From Octopus sinensis (taxonomy: Eukaryota): a DNA stretch of 42,472 nucleotides. Below the pieces are notes generated by a model that was not told the DNA's origin, did not search any database, and saw only the letters and a program-made list of their open reading frames with translations. Both the position numbers and the translations under genes were made by a program. Below, piece by piece: positions 17,262-36,851 of the stretch. Numbering within the stretch: the first letter of the stretch is position 1; the number at the start of each line of letters is the position of its first letter. The stretch is taken from positions 1 to 42,472 of the forward strand of contig NW_021835188.1 of NCBI RefSeq assembly GCF_006345805.1, given 5' to 3'.

Positions 17262-19522
17262 CACGCACATATGCATACATATATATTTACATATACATAC
17301 ATACATACATACACCTAAAGCTCCACGAGGCTCCAGCAGGGGGTGGTGGCGACCCCTGTTGTACTCTTTCACCCCAACTTTCTCTCACTCTTTCTTCCTG
17401 TTTCTTGTCCTCCCCGACTTCCTATGCAACCACTGAGCCTGGATACGCATTCATCCATCCGTCAATGCTCACGGTGTCGGGGGTTGACCTGCTTTCTCTT
17501 CTGCGGGTCTTACGAATAGCAAAGGACCACGTTTCTGACTTCTCCCACGACTGGGACGAAGACCGATTCGCTCAGCAGCAACGGCAACAACAACAACAAC
17601 AACAACAGAGGTGTATTTAATTACGATTTAACCCTTTGGCTATTATATTTTCAGCCCATTTCAGATATTACTATATATATATATAAGACCGGTAGGCCAG
17701 GTGTTGGTTTTGTAGTCTTGATCATTTCATGATGGCGCGCGGTCTCATGGTTAGGGTGTTCAGCTCATGGTCATAAAGACAGCGGGCTCAGTTTTTTGAG
17801 CCGGCAGTATGTCACGACTATACAAGCACCTAAAACAATAGGAAAAGCACGGTACATGTTACTAAGCCATACTCGCTCGCGAATGACCACACCCTGCACT
17901 GTACCATACCTACGGAAATCGAGATAAGTTCAGACCCAATGAACTGTAAGTTCGAGACAGACTTATTTCTTAAGAATGGTAAATTATCTCTTCTTTTTTG
18001 GACTTACCAATGGGTAACTTCAAGAAAATGTAAAAATCGGTTGTGTTTCCTGTGCTGTTCTCTGCTACCCGAACCATTCTGCTCAGACTTGGTAACGAAT
18101 CTAAAGCATATTGGATATCTTTTGCTGATGCAGTTCCTGGAAGTGGTACTGTAAATAAAAAGCAAAATGGCAGAATACATATAAGCCGATTCCTGTGCCA
18201 TCTTGGAACTGGTTAATTTATCCAATTCTCTAAAGATTCAACCAATCTGCTCTTCCCCTGCTCGAGCCAAATAATAAAACAACACATAAAGCTAAATAAA
18301 ACAATAATAAAACAGCCATCCATCCATTTTCTCTGTACACCGTTCCTAGAAAGTTCGTGGCGGAATTCTCCACGGGTACCGCCTCCATGGACTCCTAATA
18401 CAAGCAGCCATTTATACTCTTTTAAGCTGACCAACCGTGATTACTGAGACAATGGATATTACCCGACCATTCCATTCTTGGTTTACTTTTAGGTCTCCTG
18501 CTAGTTGGCTCCGCTTGAAGAATTCGTTCTGCGATTCTTCCCTGTTAAATGCTAATCCCATCTCCGAAGTACCAGAGCTATATAACCTCTCAATGTAGAG
18601 AAATAACGGCTCGACCTAGAAAAACTCCATGATCTCTGAGCTACGTTTCCTGTCGAGATTCGTTACTCCAAAGATCCCTCGGATGAACCCTGTTTCCGAT
18701 CGCTTGTATTCGTGATCATTCTTTTTCTGTCCCTACCCAGCAATCATTAATTTTTATGGATAACTAGCAGTATCACCCGGCATTGCTCGGGTTTGTAAGG
18801 GAAATAACTATATAAGCATTTTTAGAGAGTTACTTCCCTTATATAAAACCGAGTAAAAATGCATTAAAAGAACGAAAAAATGATGGTAAATTTTTTTTAA
18901 ATCGTAGACTCATCGTAGACGCGCGCTAATACCCAGAAGGGCTCGATATGTATCACGACTATAAGATACCCGCTTTCGGTTAAACTGTACCGCAAAATGT
19001 AGGAGTAGTTAGGAATCTAATTAGGAGTAGACAGACAGACACACACAACTTCAGTTTTATATATAAAGATGACACCTGACGACGTAAAGATGACAAAACA
19101 TGAACTGCAAATAAATTCTACCGAATTTAAAGAACTGAAATTCTTACTCACATGTGGCAGCGTTACCAAACTTCAACTTGAACTTAGCACCGTCGGTCTG
19201 CGGAGAATTCTTTCTTATTACTAAACTCTGGATGTCATCGGAACTTTCGGTCTTGTTTAATTCATTCAGTTTTATTATCTGGATAAATGTAAGGAATGGT
19301 TGCGTATCACCATATCAACATAGGGAAACATTCTGACACACACACACATATGAATATACGCATGCGCATAAACACACACACACATAGATGAACATACACA
19401 GGCGTATAAACACACACACACACACCACACACACACACACAGATAAATGAACATACACAGATGCATAAACACACACACATATACTATACACCATTGTGCA
19501 CATGTGTGTGTATGTATGTTTC

Positions 19523-19553
<31 letters not shown>

Positions 19554-20239
19554 GTACCTTGTTCTACCATTACTCTATATTTATATTACGGAGATGTACT
19601 TGCATAGCAAGTGACCTGATCTGAGATCGTGTGCCGAAACGAAAACAATTGCAGCGTGGAAGGTGTTTGCAAGCCATTTAAGAAACACACAGAAGCCGTT
19701 CGATTCACTTCAACATTTAAGTTTAATTTGTCAAAATATTTTCGTCGCTTTAAGACCGCGACCTCTTCACTGACAAAAATCAGGGATGCATCACGGATTT
19801 TTGTCAGTGAACAGGTCGCGGTCTATATTTATACTACTACCTTTATTTTGCTGGAAAAGTAATAGATTTGTATTGCAATATTTTAGTTTCCGTTGAAAAC
19901 TTTTTCACTCTTCTCAATCTGTTAACGACTAAACTTTCAGGCGAGTATTCTGACATTGATGTAGCAACATTTGAAATATTGTCCAGGTAAATCCAACTGA
20001 TGAAGACTAATCAATTTTACGCTGACAAACGTATTTGAAGAGTCCGAAACCTAGGTACAGGATTATCCGATTCTGGGTTGTTCATTTATCTAATGTTCTC
20101 CCTAGAGGTAAGACAAAATGTTTTATGTTTGTTGCACTCACACGTCTTTGCCAGTATACACGCAGCGAAACTTTACTATAGCGTCGTAAATGTATCCACT
20201 GCTATTTCCAGTAAATATTGGGGCTTTGTTGTACAACTA

Positions 20240-20278
<39 letters not shown>

Positions 20279-21439
20279 ATATATATATATATATATAAGA
20301 TTCCGTCGAATTAGGTACTTAAGTTGAGGCACCCTAGCTAGGTGGGTATAATCCGCATACCCAAACAATATTATTGAATATTGAATATGAAGACTCCATG
20401 CAGGGGTGTTTGAACATGATATTATTGTCGTGTGTGCAGACAACGCAATCCAGCTAAGGGAAGATATCCGCTCTTGGTAATATATATATATATATACATA
20501 CATACACACACGACCAGCTTCTTTAAGTTTCTTAAAGTTTCTTTAAACGCATTGTGACCAGCGGTGCGTAACGACATTCGATAGTCTGGTCGATAACCAC
20601 TACTACATAGGATGTGTTAAAGCTAAAGAACGTGTAGCTCCTTCAGACTTACCATTGTTTTAAGGCGGCGAGCTGGCAGAAACGTTAGCACGCCGGGCGA
20701 AATGCTTAGCGGTATTTCGTCTGCCGCTACGTTCTGAGTTCAAATTCTGCAGAGGTCGACTTTGCCTTTCATCCTTTCGGGGTCGATTAAATAAGTACCA
20801 GTTACGCACTGGGGTCGATATAATCGACTTAATCCGTTTGTCTATCCTTGTTTGTCCCCTCTGTGTTTAGCCCCTTGTGGATAGTAAAGAAACAGAAATA
20901 GATATTTCGTCTGTCTTTACGTTCTGAGTTCAACTTTGCCTTTCATCCTTTCGGGGGTCGATAAATTAAGTACCAGTTGCGTACTGGGGTCGATCTAACT
21001 GACTGAGCCCCCTCCCCAAAAATTTCAGGCCTTGTGCCTAGAGTAGAAAAGACTTACCATTGTTTCGTTGACTTCAGTTGTGCTGAGAATTATTCTTTGT
21101 TTCATGTTCCTGCTGTGACCTGTCTGCGACCGAGTCACTGAGCTGTTCTTGCTAAACATTCTTACATAGACTTCTGGTGTGGGTCTCGAGTATCGGTTTT
21201 CATACAAAACCTCGATGTAATACCTGAAACGGACGAGAGGAAAATTTGGATGAAACAAATAACAAAAAAACTTAGGCGCAGGAGTGGCTGTGTGGTAAGT
21301 AGCTTGCTAACCAACCACATGGTTCCGGGTTCAGTCCCACTGCGTGGCACCTTGGGCAAGTGTCTCCTGCTATAGCCTCGGGCCGACCAATGCCTTGTGA
21401 GTGGATTTGGTAGACGGAAACTGAAAGAAGCCTGTCGTA

Positions 21440-21499
<60 letters not shown>

Positions 21500-23364
21500 G
21501 TGTGTGTGTGTGTGTGGTGTGTGTGTGTGTGTGTGTGTTTGTGTTTGTGTGTCTGTGTTTGTCCCCCCAGCATTGCTTGACAACCGATGCTGGTGTGTTT
21601 ACGTCCCCGTCACCTAGCGGTTCGGCAAAAAAGACCGATAGAATAAGTACTGGGCTTACAAAGAATAAGCCCCGGGGTCGATTTGCTCGACAAAAGGCGG
21701 TGCTCCAGCATGGCCGCAGTCAAATGACTGAAACAAGTAAAAGAGTAAAAGAGTAAAAGAGAATATCAAAAACAGAAAATTATTATGATTTCATTTATTT
21801 GCCACAGGGGCAAAGCATGAGGGGGACAATACGAAGACAGACATAAAATGTGGGGGGGGGTTACATGGAGTGAAATGATGAAAAACAAAGGAAAGAAAGA
21901 AAGTATATTCGGTATACACCGGAAAAGAAGGGACATATACTCTTTTACTCTTTTACTTGTTTCAGTCATTTGACTGTGGCCATGCTGGAGCACCGCCTTT
22001 AGTCGATCAAATCGACCCCGGGATTTATTCTTTGTAAGCCTAGTACTTATTCTATCAGTCTCTTTTGCCGAACCGCTATCGGACTTACTTCTGAACTATT
22101 TCTACCTCCATCTTGTACACACACACACACACACACATATACAGTATTCTCTTTTACTCTCTTTTAAGTGTTTCAGGCATTTGACGGGGGCCATGCTGGA
22201 GCACCGCCTTTAGTCGATCAAATCGACCCCGGGGCTTATTCTTTGTAAGCCTAGTACTTATTTTATCGGTCTCTTTCTTGCCGAACCGCTAAGTTACGGG
22301 AACGTAAACACACCAGCATCGGTTGTCAAGCGATGTTGGGGGGACAAAGACAGACACGCAAACACGCACATACATATATATATACATATATACGACGGGC
22401 TTCTTTCAGTTTCCGTCTTCCAAATCCACTCACAAGCCTTTGGTCGGCCCGAGGCTATAGTAGAAGACACTTGCCCAAGGTGCCACACAGTGGGACTGAA
22501 CCTGGAACCATGTGGTTCGTAAGCAAGCTACTTACCACACAGCCACTCCTACGCCTATGTATAACATATAAGTCTTGTGAGTGGATTTGGTAGAGGGAAA
22601 CTGAAAGAAGCCCTTCGTATATATATATATATATGTGTGTGTGTGGTGTGTGTGTGTGTGTGGTGTGTGTGTGTGTGTGTGTGTGTGCATGTGTGTGTGT
22701 CTGTATTTGTTGTCCACCATCATCGGTTGACAACCGATGTTGGTGTGTTTACGTCCCTGAAACTTAGTGATTCGGCAAAAGAGCCCTATAGAATAAGTAC
22801 TAGGCTTACAAAGAATAAGTCCTCGGGGGTCGATTTGTTCGACGGAAGGTGGTGCTCCAGCGTGGCCGCAATCAAAATGACTGAAACAAGCAAAAGCCTC
22901 CTCCGTGCCCGTGTTTTTCTTATAATGAGATGTTGTGTGGGGGTGGGAGGGGGCAGGGGGATAAGGGTCCTGGGGGGGGGGGTAAATAAAGAATTGGTTT
23001 TTACTTTTTGCCTTCGATCAGGTTAATTTCAACATTTTCAGTCCGGCGCTGAAAACAAAAAGAAACGTAATTAATTTGAATTTATTATTTCATAAATGAA
23101 AAAAAATAAATAAACAATTAAAAGAATGGTGTGTGTCCGGTTATAGAAATCAGGTAAAAAGCGGACATTGGAGCTTGACCGCGGTCTTTTGGCTTGCGGG
23201 GGAGTCTGTCAAACCGTCCAACCCATGCCAGCTTGGGAAAGAAGGGACGATAAATGGCGATGATGATGATGTGATGATGATGATGATGATGATGATGGTG
23301 TTAATGATGATGATGATGGTGGTGATGATGATGGTGGTGGTGGTGGTGGTGGTGATGATGATGT

Positions 23365-23399
<35 letters not shown>

Positions 23400-23958
23400 G
23401 TGTTAATGATGATGATGATGGTGGTGATGATGATGGTGGTGGTGGTGGTGGTGTGATGATGATGATGATGATGATGAGGAGGAGGAGGAGGAGGAGGAGG
23501 TTGGTGGTGGTGATGATGATGATGATGATGATGGTAACAATGATGGTGGTGATGAAGATGATGTTGATAATGATGAGAATGATGAGGAGGCTGATGATGA
23601 TGATGATGATGATGATGATTACAATGCAATAGAGAAGACAGTATGTTCGATTCGGGCATTTTCTTACCATAAATTCTTTACTTTCGTTCGTACTCAGCCA
23701 AACCTGTGACGGTCCGTTACCGTTTAATTTGAGGGTGTGTTTACCAGAGTAAATTGGAACCAGGAATCCTGACATTCGTATACTTTTCCGATCTTTACTT
23801 GTGGAATATTCACCGTTGTCGTTCCAGCCCTCCATATAACCAGACGTGGTGCCATTGTAGGACCTCAATTTCGTAAACGACTGAGCCCCGATATCCCAGC
23901 TCTCTATCTTCAGACCTCGGTTTCCTGTGGAAACAGAAACAGAGAGAGTAACGGTGGA

Positions 23959-33254: not shown

Positions 33255-36200
33255 GATAAGTCTAGTACTGTACAAGCATACTTAAACTGGAGACAGAAAC
33301 ACCCTGAAGTAAGACCCTACATAGACAGTAACAGCTTGCCAATGTTAGAAGAAACATTATAAAAAAGAAATTACTGAAGTAAGTAGGATTGATCAGGTTA
33401 GACAAGCAATACCGGATAAAATGAACGAAGCTGCAGCTAGAGAAGATAATACAGAGGAAATGATTATAGACCAGCCCAGGGCGGATAAAAACGAAGAGAG
33501 GATTGAAAGAGTTAGTATAAGTGATAGGCAAAGTGAAATACGCCTGAACCAATCATAAACACTAAGACAGATGAGCATCAAATAGATAAAGAAAGTCACA
33601 CAAATATTGACCCCAACAGAACTACATGAGCTAAAAAATCAAATCATGATTGAATGGCTGAAAATTAAAGAAACCACATGGATGAGCGTGATACACTTCC
33701 TAAAATCCGCAACTCTAACCAAAACATGAAAATAATTGGTAAAATCCGGCTTGCACTTAAGGATATAATTTCAGTTAATGATGTTGATATCACAAACCTC
33801 AACCACTATACTATGCATCCGCGAAAATCTCAACGATCCTATGTGTGTAAAGATTAGAAAACGGCAACAGTCCCAAAAAGCCTTCTTGGCAGAGCGTCTG
33901 CAACAACAAATTAAAGTATTTAGATCTGACATTGAATATTGAAAAACCTTAAGGCTCACAAGACTACCAAACCTACAAAAACCCAAAAATTACTGAAAAA
34001 ATACAATATGAAAACTATACTTGATATTGATGCCACCATAGAAACCATCAAACAAAAGGTATCTGCCAAAGCTGCCCGCATAGCGAGGTATGAAAAGCGT
34101 GTAGATTTTTCAAGGACAACAACATGTTCAAAAATAACACCAAGAATTTTTACAGGAAGATAGGAAAAAACAGCGTTTACTGCAGGGTCTGTACCATCAA
34201 AAGAAGAAGTGCAGAGATTTTGGAATAAAATCTGGGCAGAGAAAAAAACACACAACGAAAAGGCCCCCTGGATTGACAGAATATCTACAGAACTGGACCC
34301 CTTAGAAGAGCAAAAGTGGAGGGTGTCAAGGTAGAAGATATAGATCTGCTCTCAGGAGGTCAAGCAAATGGAAGTCTCCAGGAAAGGATAAAATTCCTAA
34401 CTTCTGGCTGAATGCCTTCCCAGAGAGCCATGAACTGCTAACAGAACTGTACAATGATGTTTTGCAACACCCTAGTAGGATGCCTCCTTGGCTAGTTAAT
34501 GGGTTAACATTCCTGCTTCCAAAAGTGAAGAAACAAATGAACCAAAAAACTATAGACCCATAACCTGCTTAACAACTATGTACAAAACACCTAACATCTG
34601 TCCTGACGGATATACCTATAGTTTTTTAAACAGACAGCAGCATATTCCCTAATGAACAGAAAGGATGTAAACGTGGATCCTACGGCTGTAAAGACCAACT
34701 ACTCATCAATAAGATGATCTTAGAAGATTGTCACAAACGACACAAAAACTTATCAATAGCCTGGATAGACTATAAAAAGGCTTTTGATAGCCTACCACAT
34801 AGCTGGATTAGGAAATGCCTTGAAATGTATAAGATAGCACCAACTCTGCGAAACTTCTTGACTGTAAGTATGAGATCATGGAGAACCACACTAACTCTGA
34901 ACAGTGACAGTGAATCCCTAAATGCTGGTGATGTAAAAATTTCGTGTGGCATTTTCCAGGGTGACTCACTGTCACCACTCCTCTTTTGTTTATCCTTAAT
35001 ACCTCTCTCAGCTGCTCAATGACGCGCAGTACGGGTATAAAATGTTTGATAAAATATAAATCATCTCGTTTACATGGATGATTTAAAGCTTTTTGCAAAA
35101 AATGATCAACAACTCAAGGCTTACTAGCGATAGTCAAACAATTCAGTGACGACATCAGAATGCAATTCGGCCTCGATAAATGTGCAAAGGCTACCTTTAT
35201 CAAAGGAAAAATGACAGAAACATCTAACGTTAAACCTTGACCAACAGAATGTCATAAAAGAACTAGACCCAGCGGAGAGCTACAAGTACCTAGGGGTAAT
35301 TGAAGGGAACGGAATAAGGCATTCAGAGAGATGAAGGAAAGGATCAGGAGAGAATGCTATCGAAGAGTGAGAGCAATACTCAAGACAGAGCTGAATGCAA
35401 GAAACAGGATCGAAGCAATCAATGCATTAGCTATACCAGTCGTGACTTACAGTTTCAATATTGTTAACTGGTCAATTACTGAAATATGTCAGCTCGACAG
35501 AAAATAAGGAAACTGTTGACAATGCATAGAATGCACCACGCTAAGGCAGATACAGAACGACTCTATCTGCCAAGAAAAGAGGGAGGCCGTGGTCTTTTGC
35601 AACTGGCAATAACAATGAAGATTGCTACAATTGGCCTAGACACCTACCTGAAAAACTCTGAGGACTGGATGTTAAAACTTGTCTCAAAACATGAAAACAA
35701 GAAAGCATCATACTCAGTCACAAAACAGGCAAAGGAATATCTAAGTGAATTCCGAATACAACCAATTTCGGAATTAGAGATAGACATACAAGAAACAAGC
35801 ACAGAAAAAGCTAGGCGCATGAAAACCCGTGCAAAACTGCGGCCTTAGATATTCTGAAAATAAATGGCAAGAAAAACCTCTCTATGGCAAATACCCAAAG
35901 AGAGCGAATAATGCAGATATCGACAAAGCCCTGACCCATCAATGGCTAATGGCCTCTGGCTTAAAATCTGAAACAGAGGGGTTTATCATAGCAGCTCAAG
36001 ATCAATGCCTACCAACAAGAAACTACCAGGCCAACATATTAAAGATCAGAAGCAGTCCAACGTGTCGTGTATGCAAGCAACAAAATGAAACCATTGACCA
36101 TGTGGTCTCCAAGTGCAGTCTCTTCTAGCGCCTACAGAGTATCTCAACAGGCACGATAGAGCTGCACAATATATTCACTGGGTAATCTGTAAAAACCTGG

Positions 36201-36851
36201 ATTTGCCCCATGAAAAAAACTGGTGGGAACACAACCACCCCCAGTGCTTGAAAATGACCACATCTCACTCCTCTGGAACTTCACCATTCAAACTGACAGG
36301 AAGATAGATGCAAATAGGCCAGACATCATATTGAAAGACTTCAAACAAAGAACATGCCTCCTCATTGATATGACTGTCCCAATCGATATAAACGTATCTG
36401 TCAGAACCTACCAAAAACTGAGCAAATATAAAGATCTTGAAATAGAAATCAGCAAAATGTGGAAGCTGAAGACTAAAACAATACCTGTTGTCATAGGTGC
36501 CCTGGGAATGATAGCAAAAGGGGCTGATAGCTACCTAACTCAGATACCAGGAAACCCCAAAATGGCAGAAGTTCAAAAGATAGTGCTCATGGGAACTGCT
36601 CATATCCTACGCAAAATACTCTCTATGTAACCTCAAGGTTTAAAACAAACATAATTTTCGGTTTATTTAAAAAAAAAAAAAAAAAAAAAAAACTTTTTTT
36701 TTTAGACATTCATTAGTACAAAATCCCCACCCCCCAAATATATGGCACACTAGGCATAACAACAACATGAACTTCCAACCCTGTTGTCTCTTGAGGTTCT
36801 GGGTGAGACTTGGAGCCAACTTGTACAAATATAAAGCAAAAGTCAAACATA

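What the first reader, a model, noticed from the sequence alone, without database searches (positions are those of the whole stretch)
20645..21065. SINE insertion duplicated an exon's splice donor and supplies a matching cryptic acceptor
The 16-bp TSD AGACTTACCATTGTTT comprises the last 8 nt of exon i plus the first 8 nt of its intron. The pre-mRNA therefore has two identical AAACAAUG|GUAAGUCU donors 405 nt apart. The antisense SINE head adds CUAAC...UUUCUGCCAG, defining a potential 20-nt frameshifting micro-exon (20653-20672). Use of the distal donor alone reads into a stop 11 codons after the exon. This is a plausible newborn poison-exon / NMD switch (inference). The branch-point-to-AG distance is short (about 12 nt).
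Basis: partly seen in the sequence, partly recalled or inferred. Interest (0 to 1): 0.7.

Follow-up and report, generated by a model that had tools for sequence, protein, structure and literature searches.

The report
Old SINE insertion duplicated a splice donor
In the octopus fibrocystin-L gene, an old mobile-element insertion landed on an exon-intron boundary and copied the splice signal; the gene still splices from the first copy, and whether the second copy is ever used has not been tested.

Summary
The sequence observation is correct. AGACTTACCATTGTTT occurs exactly twice (20645-20660 and 21050-21065). The two copies flank a 389-nt SINE that is antisense to a minus-strand gene. The window is a whole Octopus sinensis scaffold carrying part of fibrocystin-L (PKHD1L1-like). 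Exon i (21223-21058) encodes the end of the PA14 domain. The RefSeq protein maps exactly onto the window with the junction 21058|19278, so the exon-adjacent donor gives the productive mRNA.

The word "newborn" is wrong. O. bimaculoides carries the same insertion, the same two 16-mers and the same junctions. Cuttlefish has one donor at the same intron position.

The coding sequence downstream of exon i has dN/dS 0.25, so productive splicing persisted after the insertion.

The distal donor scores the same as the real one, at the 73rd percentile of this gene's donors. The proposed acceptor of the 20-nt micro-exon scores below all 48 real acceptors and no better than a random AG. Distal-donor use therefore looks more plausible than the micro-exon. 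It would give a stop after 10 codons.

A 55-nt perfectly conserved block covers the SINE head and the distal donor (P about 0.001-0.01). This hints at constraint but does not prove it. No RNA data could be reached. I rate this a new member of a known kind, of modest interest.

The parts
21058..21223 (-). Exon i of fibrocystin-L-like (166 nt). It encodes (K)[12 protein letters not shown]...STTEVNETM, the C-terminal part of the PA14 domain.
   Evidence: Exact mapping of RefSeq protein P0207 onto the window. The Pfam PA14 match on P0207 residues 145-229 runs into this exon. The O. bimaculoides ortholog is 92% identical with no gaps.
21050..21065 (-). Right TSD copy. It holds the last 8 nt of exon i plus the first 8 nt of the intron, and contains the productive donor D1 (AAACAATG|GTAAGTCT, cut after 21058).
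   Evidence: The donor scores 10.8 bits, at the 73rd percentile of true donors.
20661..21049 (+). SINE-type retroposon, antisense to the gene. It consists of a filler T at 20661, a full unit from the head AAGGCGGCGAGC at 20662 to about 20898, and a partial second unit from about 20899 to 21049.
   Evidence: Internal direct repeats, other copies in the window and the orthologous 209-nt monomer in O. bimaculoides. ARAGORN and Rfam find no tRNA.
20645..20660 (-). Left TSD copy, holding the decoy or distal donor D2 (cut after 20653). It is followed by the original intron.
   Evidence: It is identical in O. bimaculoides, where the intact 75-nt original intron follows it.
20653..20672 (-). It is bounded by the AG at 20674-20673 and by D2.
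   Evidence: The sequence is present. The acceptor scores -3.1 bits, below all 48 true acceptors. Inclusion would give a TGA spanning the junction with exon j.
20684..20688 (-). CTAAC branch-point-like motif, with the branch A at 20685, 12 nt from the G of the AG.
   Evidence: Read directly from the sequence.
20639..20693 (-). 55-nt block identical between O. sinensis and O. bimaculoides. It covers the SINE head, the cryptic AG, D2 and 6 nt of the old intron.
   Evidence: It is the second longest of 734 non-exonic perfect runs. Non-exonic identity is 85.9%.
19310..20591 (-). About 1.29 kb present in O. sinensis but absent from O. bimaculoides, lying inside what was a 75-nt intron. It is rich in repeats and microsatellites.
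19152..19278 (-). True next exon (exon j), encoding [15 protein letters not shown]...FGNAAT. Its acceptor is TTATCCAG|ATAATA.
   Evidence: The acceptor scores 8.6 bits.
23005..23048 (-). The 44-nt exon immediately upstream of exon i, encoding [14 protein letters not shown]. It resolves the phase mismatch that appears when exon i is joined directly to the larger PA14 exon at 23668-23924.

Best explanation
This is an old, fixed retroposon insertion that the gene tolerates.

A tRNA-SINE-like element inserted in antisense orientation across the boundary between the PA14-domain exon of fibrocystin-L and a short intron. That intron is 75 nt in O. bimaculoides. The staggered cuts lay 8 nt inside the exon and 8 nt inside the intron, so the 16-bp target-site duplication rebuilt the exon end and a complete donor (D1) upstream of the element. 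This is shown.

D1 joined to the acceptor at 19278 gives the productive mRNA. This is shown by three RefSeq models and by purifying selection downstream.

The second copy (D2) is a sequence-identical donor at the head of the old intron. I infer that it is a latent competitor. Any use of D2 keeps the SINE in the mRNA and stops translation after 10 codons, and such transcripts would probably be degraded.

I also infer that exon definition favours D1, because D1 closes a 166-nt exon whereas D2 would close a 571-nt exon (391 nt in O. bimaculoides). On that reasoning D2 products would be a minor by-product rather than a designed switch. The 20-nt micro-exon is unlikely because its acceptor is poor.
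For: - The TSD is exact and is not expected by chance.
- The SINE family has other copies, and one of them has its own 13-bp TSD.
- The same insertion and both 16-mers are present in O. bimaculoides.
- The cuttlefish ortholog has the same intron position and phase with a single donor, GTAAGTCA, and its 16-mer is unique.
- A cuttlefish- or squid-like (decapodiform) transcript-derived protein, P0151, reads straight across the equivalent junction.
- RefSeq models P0207, P0153 and P0209 all read ...EVNETM|IIKLNE..., and P0207 maps exactly to 21058|19278.
- dN/dS is 0.25 over the 371 codons downstream of exon i and 0.27 upstream.
- D1 and D2 both score 10.8 bits. The cryptic acceptor scores -3.1 bits, below all true acceptors.
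Against: - No transcript data were available, so the relative use of D1 and D2 is unknown.
- Gene models may favour the junction that keeps the reading frame open.
- In mammalian in vitro systems, two strong 5' splice sites splice almost wholly from the intron-proximal one (PMC3413131). Here that is D2. In O. bimaculoides D2 still heads an intact 75-nt intron.
- The 55-nt perfectly conserved block over the SINE head and D2 (P about 0.001 at 85.9% identity, about 0.01 at 90%) is not expected for a neutral by-product.
Confidence: 0.6

Rival explanations
1. The duplicated donor is a selected regulatory device. Regulated choice of D2 over D1 makes an unproductive, stop-containing mRNA that tunes fibrocystin-L output (alternative splicing coupled to NMD).
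For: - D2 is a top-quartile donor.
- Both copies have been retained unchanged in two species separated by dS of about 0.17.
- The 55-nt perfect block is the second longest of 734 non-exonic runs.
- Proximal-site preference for paired strong donors is documented in vitro (PMC3413131).
Against: - Only two species could be compared. About 0.6 non-exonic runs of 55 nt or more are expected by chance somewhere in 9 kb, and two were seen.
- There are no transcript data.
- No regulatory motif was tested.
- Predicted accessibility of D2 lies within the range of real donors.
Confidence: 0.2
2. D2 is the predominant donor under the intron-proximal rule, especially in O. bimaculoides where it heads the original 75-nt intron. 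Most transcripts would then be unproductive and the gene would run at a reduced level.
For: - PMC3413131.
- The 75-nt intron downstream of D2 in O. bimaculoides.
- Short introns of 95-161 nt are spliced elsewhere in this gene.
Against: - Purifying selection downstream (dN/dS 0.25) requires substantial productive mRNA.
- Three gene models use D1.
- The in vitro rule comes from short mammalian substrates and need not hold under exon definition with kilobase introns.
Confidence: 0.1
3. One reading: a 20-nt frameshifting poison micro-exon (20672-20653) is included, using the SINE-head AG and D2.
For: - CTAAC, a short pyrimidine stretch, an AG and a strong donor are all present and perfectly conserved.
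- A UGC lies at -6..-4 of the AG, read directly from the sequence.
- Inclusion would give an immediate TGA.
Against: - The acceptor scores -3.1 bits, below all 48 true acceptors, and 46% of random intronic AGs score as well.
- The branch A is only 12 nt from the AG.
- A 20-nt internal exon usually needs dedicated enhancers (general knowledge).
Confidence: 0.05
4. The two 16-mers are not a target-site duplication. They would be a pre-existing local duplication into which the SINE later fell.
For: No octopod empty site could be examined.
Against: - The repeats abut the SINE ends exactly, apart from one filler T.
- The element's ends match those of other copies.
- Another copy of the family has its own 13-bp TSD.
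- Cuttlefish has one donor and a unique 16-mer.
Confidence: 0.02

Closest known systems
Canine merle allele of PMEL: a SINE at the intron 10/exon 11 boundary (PMC7349775)
   Same: In both cases a SINE sits in reverse orientation exactly at an exon-intron boundary. In both, a roughly 15-16-bp target-site duplication includes the original splice site, the SINE body offers cryptic splice sites, and the outcome is a choice between normal and aberrant splicing.
   Different: Merle duplicates the acceptor, whereas this insertion duplicates the donor. The merle switch depends on the length of the SINE poly(A)/poly(T) tail, and this element has no A-tail. Merle is a recent polymorphic allele with a phenotype. 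This insertion is fixed and shared by two species, and it has no known phenotype.
Antisense SINE (Alu-type) exonization and poison exons coupled to NMD
   Same: An antisense SINE inside an intron supplies candidate splice sites, and inclusion would introduce a premature stop.
   Different: The strong site here is not SINE-derived. It is a copy of the host's own donor made by the TSD. The SINE-derived acceptor is weak. No transcript evidence exists.
Model substrates with duplicated strong 5' splice sites (Hodson et al. 2012, PMC3413131)
   Same: Two identical consensus-like donors lie a few hundred nucleotides apart on one pre-mRNA.
   Different: Those are engineered mammalian substrates spliced in vitro, where the intron-proximal site wins. 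Here the annotated product uses the intron-distal site, in vivo, in a cephalopod, with a long downstream intron in O. sinensis.
Octopus tRNA-derived SINEs (OK, OR1 and OR2 of Ohshima and Okada 1994, cited in PMC4824008)
   Same: It is a short dispersed element in an Octopus genome, with a GGCG... head, a B-box-like GTTCAAATTC and TSDs.
   Different: I could not compare it with the published consensus sequences. ARAGORN and Rfam do not recognise a tRNA in the head. This copy and one other are head-plus-partial-second-unit dimers.

Membership tests
SINE (non-autonomous non-LTR retroposon) insertion | Many dispersed, similar copies with a common 5' end | tested here: met
   At least 7 copies or fragments lie in the window at 72-93% identity, and more lie in L001.
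SINE (non-autonomous non-LTR retroposon) insertion | Flanking target-site duplication | tested here: met
   There is an exact 16-bp TSD here. The copy at 6676-7093 has a 13-bp TSD with one mismatch.
SINE (non-autonomous non-LTR retroposon) insertion | Head derived from a small RNA (tRNA) with an internal Pol III promoter | tested here: inconclusive
   ARAGORN and Rfam give no tRNA hit. B-box-like GTTCAAATTC and A-box-like TAGCACGCC motifs are visible by eye only. The head folds somewhat better than shuffles (z -2.45).
SINE (non-autonomous non-LTR retroposon) insertion | 3' tail shared with a partner LINE | not tested
   RT-like ORFs lie at about 33.3-36.7 kb in the window, but I did not compare their 3' end with the SINE tail.
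SINE (non-autonomous non-LTR retroposon) insertion | Orthologous empty site in a relative | tested here: inconclusive
   O. bimaculoides is also filled. Cuttlefish has a single donor at the same intron position, but its intron cannot be aligned.
Poison exon / alternative splicing coupled to NMD | The alternative junction is observed in transcripts | not testable with these tools
   No RNA-seq was reachable. The protein cluster of this gene holds only 6 members, all carrying names from sequence-database or annotation sources, and none from transcript assemblies. A search with the exon-i ORF found nothing.
Poison exon / alternative splicing coupled to NMD | The alternative product carries a premature stop far upstream of the last junction | tested here: met
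   Use of D2 gives a stop after 10 codons. The micro-exon gives a TGA at its junction. At least 7 further introns lie downstream in the window.
Poison exon / alternative splicing coupled to NMD | Competent splice sites on both sides of the cassette | tested here: not met
   The donor scores 10.8 bits, which is good. The acceptor scores -3.1 bits, below all 48 true acceptors. This applies to the micro-exon only, because use of D2 alone needs no new acceptor.
Poison exon / alternative splicing coupled to NMD | Conservation above the neutral level | tested here: inconclusive
   There is a 55-nt perfect block, with P about 0.001-0.01 for the element specified in advance. Only two species were compared, and one longer non-exonic run exists elsewhere.
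Merle-type SINE at a splice boundary | Antisense SINE whose TSD contains the original splice site | tested here: met
   The duplicated site here is the donor rather than the acceptor (compare PMC7349775).
Merle-type SINE at a splice boundary | [quoted passage not shown] | tested here: not met
   The element ends ...GTAGAAA and has no A-tail.
Fibrocystin-L (PKHD1L1) gene | IPT/TIG repeats plus a PA14 domain near the N-terminus, and orthology to named fibrocystin-L proteins | tested here: met
   Pfam finds TIG and PA14 above their cut-offs on P0207. The best hits are fibrocystin-L from O. bimaculoides (89-92% identity) and from many other animals.

The most novel reading that the evidence does not exclude
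The distal copy of the donor, together with the SINE head, has been kept unchanged for tens of millions of years because octopuses use the choice between the two identical donors as a regulated on/off valve for fibrocystin-L (productive versus stop-containing mRNA).

A related possibility is that the element's endonuclease prefers TAAGTCT, a sequence overlapping the GTAAGT donor consensus. In that case this SINE subfamily would land on splice donors and duplicate them repeatedly across the genome.
Probability: 0.12. Interest if true: 0.65.

Novelty: new member of a known kind. Interest (0 to 1): 0.33.

Why it matters
This is a clean natural experiment in 5' splice-site choice. Two donors identical over 16 nt sit on one pre-mRNA, and the arrangement is fixed in at least two octopus species.

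The downstream intron differs greatly between them: 75 nt in O. bimaculoides and 1.37 kb in O. sinensis. Public RNA-seq from the two species could therefore show directly whether proximity or exon definition decides donor choice in a cephalopod.

The case also shows how a target-site duplication can rescue a gene from an insertion that would otherwise have split an exon from its donor.

As it stands, this is one example of an event that a SINE-rich genome should produce occasionally. O. bimaculoides has 115,169 annotated SINE copies (PMC6279123). My rough estimate, assuming about 2x10^5 donors and 8 permissive offsets each in 2.7 Gb, is some tens of such hits per genome if insertion were random and neutral.

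Tried and rejected
1. I first took the ORF at 18008-18148 as the next exon. The phases did not fit. Homology to the cuttlefish protein then revealed two exons I had missed, at 23005-23048 and 19152-19278.

2. A protein search with the 93-aa ORF around exon i, meant to catch ORFs from filled or empty alleles in read assemblies, found nothing.

3. A search with the 731-aa spliced fragment found only cuttlefish, a decapodiform transcript and scallop. The octopus models are longer. They were reached only by padding the fragment with X to the expected protein length.

4. ARAGORN and Rfam, at both gathering and permissive thresholds, gave no tRNA and no known RNA family for the SINE.

5. Predicted RNA accessibility of D1 versus D2 did not discriminate. 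D2 has a mean unpaired probability of 0.34-0.36, within the 0.07-0.65 range of real donors. One O. bimaculoides index was off by 2 nt and I did not pursue it.

6. A scan of metagenome contigs for the SINE head, meant to collect more copies for a TSD census, gave no hits.

7. Other SINE-internal acceptors paired with D2 were examined. The AG before 20873 scores 6.3 bits but lies in the O. sinensis-only unit. An 81-nt exon from the AG at 20734 is stop-free and in frame in both species, but its acceptor scores 0.5 bits, and 7 of its 27 codons differ between the species. I rejected it as a conserved coding exon.

8. The first tblastn-based exon mapping failed on short exons. I replaced it with exact-match chaining.

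Full report
**What is there.**
The 16-mer AGACTTACCATTGTTT occurs exactly twice in the window, at 20645-20660 and 21050-21065. None of 100 dinucleotide-preserving shuffles gave two matches.

The 389 nt between the copies belong to a dispersed repeat family. The family has a defined 5' end, AAGGCGGCGAGCTGGCAG, and at least seven other copies or fragments in the window. One of these, at 6676-7093, has its own 13-bp target-site duplication.

The focal copy is composite. A complete unit (20662 to about 20898) is followed by a partial second unit (to 21049). ARAGORN and Rfam do not recognise a tRNA in the head. The tRNA origin therefore rests only on box-like motifs seen by eye.

**The host gene.**
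The gene lies on the minus strand. Pfam finds an IPT/TIG domain and a PA14 domain in the exon translations.

A whole-library HMMER search found a cuttlefish protein (Acanthosepion pharaonis, P0002) at about 42% identity. It aligns to 16 exons spread over the whole window.

A length-adjusted search then found fibrocystin-L of Octopus bimaculoides (P0153, XP_052830942.1). It is 92% identical with no gaps across the region of interest.

Its 90% cluster contains XP_036355861.1 (P0207), described as "fibrocystin-L-like, partial [Octopus sinensis]", on a contig of 42,472 bp, which is the length of the window. The window is therefore a complete O. sinensis scaffold.

P0207 maps onto it exactly, with 15 introns. 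Exon i is 21223-21058. The exon before it is a 44-nt exon at 23048-23005, and the exon after it is 19278-19152. The next exon is not the ORF at 18148, which I tried first.

All three available octopus gene models read ...STTEVNETM|IIKLNELNK.... That corresponds to the donor after 21058 joined to the acceptor before 19278.

- The right 16-mer is 8 nt of exon plus 8 nt of intron.
- Both copies read AAACAATG|GTAAGTCT on the minus strand.
- Read-through from the first donor gives [10 protein letters not shown] and then a stop.
- The segment 20672-20653, placed between exon i and the true exon j, reads CTC GCC GCC TTA AAA CAA TG|A, which ends in a TGA stop.
- CTAAC lies at 20688-20684, with the branch A 12 nt from the AG.

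All of this is correct.

**Age of the insertion.**
The O. bimaculoides locus (L001, CM046620.1) carries the same insertion at the same place. Both 16-mers are intact, and the junctions are the same, including the filler T. There the SINE is a 209-nt monomer. The two species differ by about 180 nt, roughly one repeat unit, which fits loss or gain of a unit between the tandem units.

The insertion therefore predates the split of the two species. Synonymous divergence in this gene is 0.14-0.22. One octopus genome paper calibrates dS of about 1 as 135 million years (PMC6279123). On that very rough scale the split is about 20 million years old. "Newborn" is not supported.

No octopod empty site could be examined. 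In cuttlefish the intron is at the same position and phase, with a single donor CAA|GTAAGTCA and a unique 16-mer. A decapodiform (cuttlefish- or squid-like) transcript-derived protein reads straight across the equivalent junction.

**The original intron.**
In O. bimaculoides the distal donor is followed by only 75 nt before exon j. That is the intact original short intron. The SINE plus one TSD copy enlarged it to 300 nt.

In O. sinensis a further 1.29 kb of repeat-rich sequence (20591-19310) lies inside that short intron. The two donors are therefore 1,779 and 1,374 nt from the acceptor.

**Is the gene still in use?**
Nei-Gojobori dN/dS between the two species is 0.25 for the 371 codons downstream of exon i and 0.27 for the 248 codons upstream of and including it. 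All of this divergence arose after the insertion. Productive splicing from the exon-adjacent donor must therefore have continued in both lineages.

**Strength of the candidate sites.**
I built position weight matrices from the 48 resolved introns of the O. bimaculoides gene.
- D1 and D2 both score 10.8 bits, at the 73rd percentile of true donors. Only 0.25% of intronic GTs reach that score.
- The acceptors of exon i and exon j score 10.1 and 8.6 bits.
That is below every one of the 48 true acceptors, and 46% of random intronic AGs score as well.

The branch A is only 12 nt from the AG, and the exon would be only 20 nt long. Together with the weak acceptor, this makes the micro-exon the least likely of the non-canonical routes.

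Use of D2 alone needs no new acceptor. [quoted passage not shown] Here that would be D2. Against this, D1 closes a 166-nt exon, whereas D2 would close an exon of 571 nt (391 nt in O. bimaculoides). I infer that exon definition favours D1, but this is not shown. Predicted RNA accessibility does not separate the two donors.

**Conservation.**
Across 11.1 kb of orthologous alignment, exonic identity is 93.1% and non-exonic identity is 85.9%. The run 20693-20639 (SINE head, AG, micro-exon, D2 and 6 nt beyond) is 55 nt of perfect identity. It is the second longest of 734 non-exonic runs and comparable to runs inside coding exons.

The chance that it shows no change is 0.0013 at 85.9% identity and about 0.01 at 90%.

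This is suggestive of constraint. It rests on two species only, however, and one longer non-exonic run exists elsewhere in the alignment.

**Verdict.**
The structure is real and well explained. A SINE-type insertion straddled an exon-intron boundary, and its target-site duplication regenerated the exon end and donor. This is why the gene survived.

What the second donor does is unknown. My best reading is a tolerated insertion with a latent competing donor. A conserved regulatory use of that donor is a minority possibility, and the micro-exon is unlikely.

The closest described case is the canine merle SINE, whose TSD contains the splice acceptor of PMEL exon 11 (PMC7349775). The octopus case is the donor-side counterpart, without the poly(A)-length mechanism. 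It is also fixed rather than polymorphic.

Noticed in passing
window 6661-7106 (+) compared with 20645-21065: The only other dimer-type copy of this SINE in the window has a TSD, AGACTTAG[A/G]TACT, that begins with the same 7-mer (AGACTTA) as the focal TSD. Its flanks are otherwise unrelated. On the nicked strand this 7-mer reads TAAGTCT, which overlaps the GTAAGT donor consensus. It could reflect a target-site preference that steers this subfamily onto splice donors. With only two copies the sample is too small to tell, and copies with other tails do not show the motif.
   Followed up: partly
window 21270-21764: About 500 nt of composite repeat are present in O. sinensis but absent at the orthologous point in O. 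bimaculoides. The repeat belongs to the abundant GGCGCAGGAGTGGCTGTGTGGTAAG... element and has a (CA)n/(TA)n core. It lies only about 50 nt upstream of the exon i acceptor. In O. sinensis, exon i is therefore flanked closely on both sides by antisense repeats, and this upstream one is the younger.
   Followed up: partly
window 4253-4353, within the well-conserved stretch 3958-4860: This is a 101-nt run of perfect identity with O. bimaculoides, the longest in the whole alignment. It lies in an intron, is AT-rich and holds several TAATTA/TAATTG motifs. Rfam gives no hit. It may be a conserved non-coding (enhancer-like) element.
   Followed up: partly
window 19310-20591: About 1.29 kb are present in O. 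sinensis but not in O. bimaculoides, inside what was a 75-nt intron. The stretch contains microsatellites, a 72-nt internal palindrome (19753-19824) and a piece that is 90% identical to a repeat elsewhere in the O. bimaculoides locus. CCTATGT occurs near both ends and could be a TSD.
   Followed up: partly
window about 33300-36700 (+); also about 9600-12900: Long ORFs here carry reverse-transcriptase-like motifs (for example [11 protein letters not shown] and [11 protein letters not shown]), followed by an A-run near 36690. This looks like a LINE-type element inside an intron of the gene. A second, degraded stretch of similar ORFs lies at about 9.6-12.9 kb. I did not compare either with the SINE tail.
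   Followed up: no
window 20734-20653 (-) and L001 22756-22836: The antisense SINE head is open in the gene's reading frame for 27 codons up to the distal donor in both species. It would form an in-frame 81-nt exon if the weak AG (0.5 bits) were used. Seven of the 27 codons differ between the species, so there is no sign of selection on the peptide.
   Followed up: yes
window 3100-4100 and 7600-9600: Very long low-complexity tracts (trinucleotide and AT-rich microsatellites) make up several kilobases of the introns.
   Followed up: no
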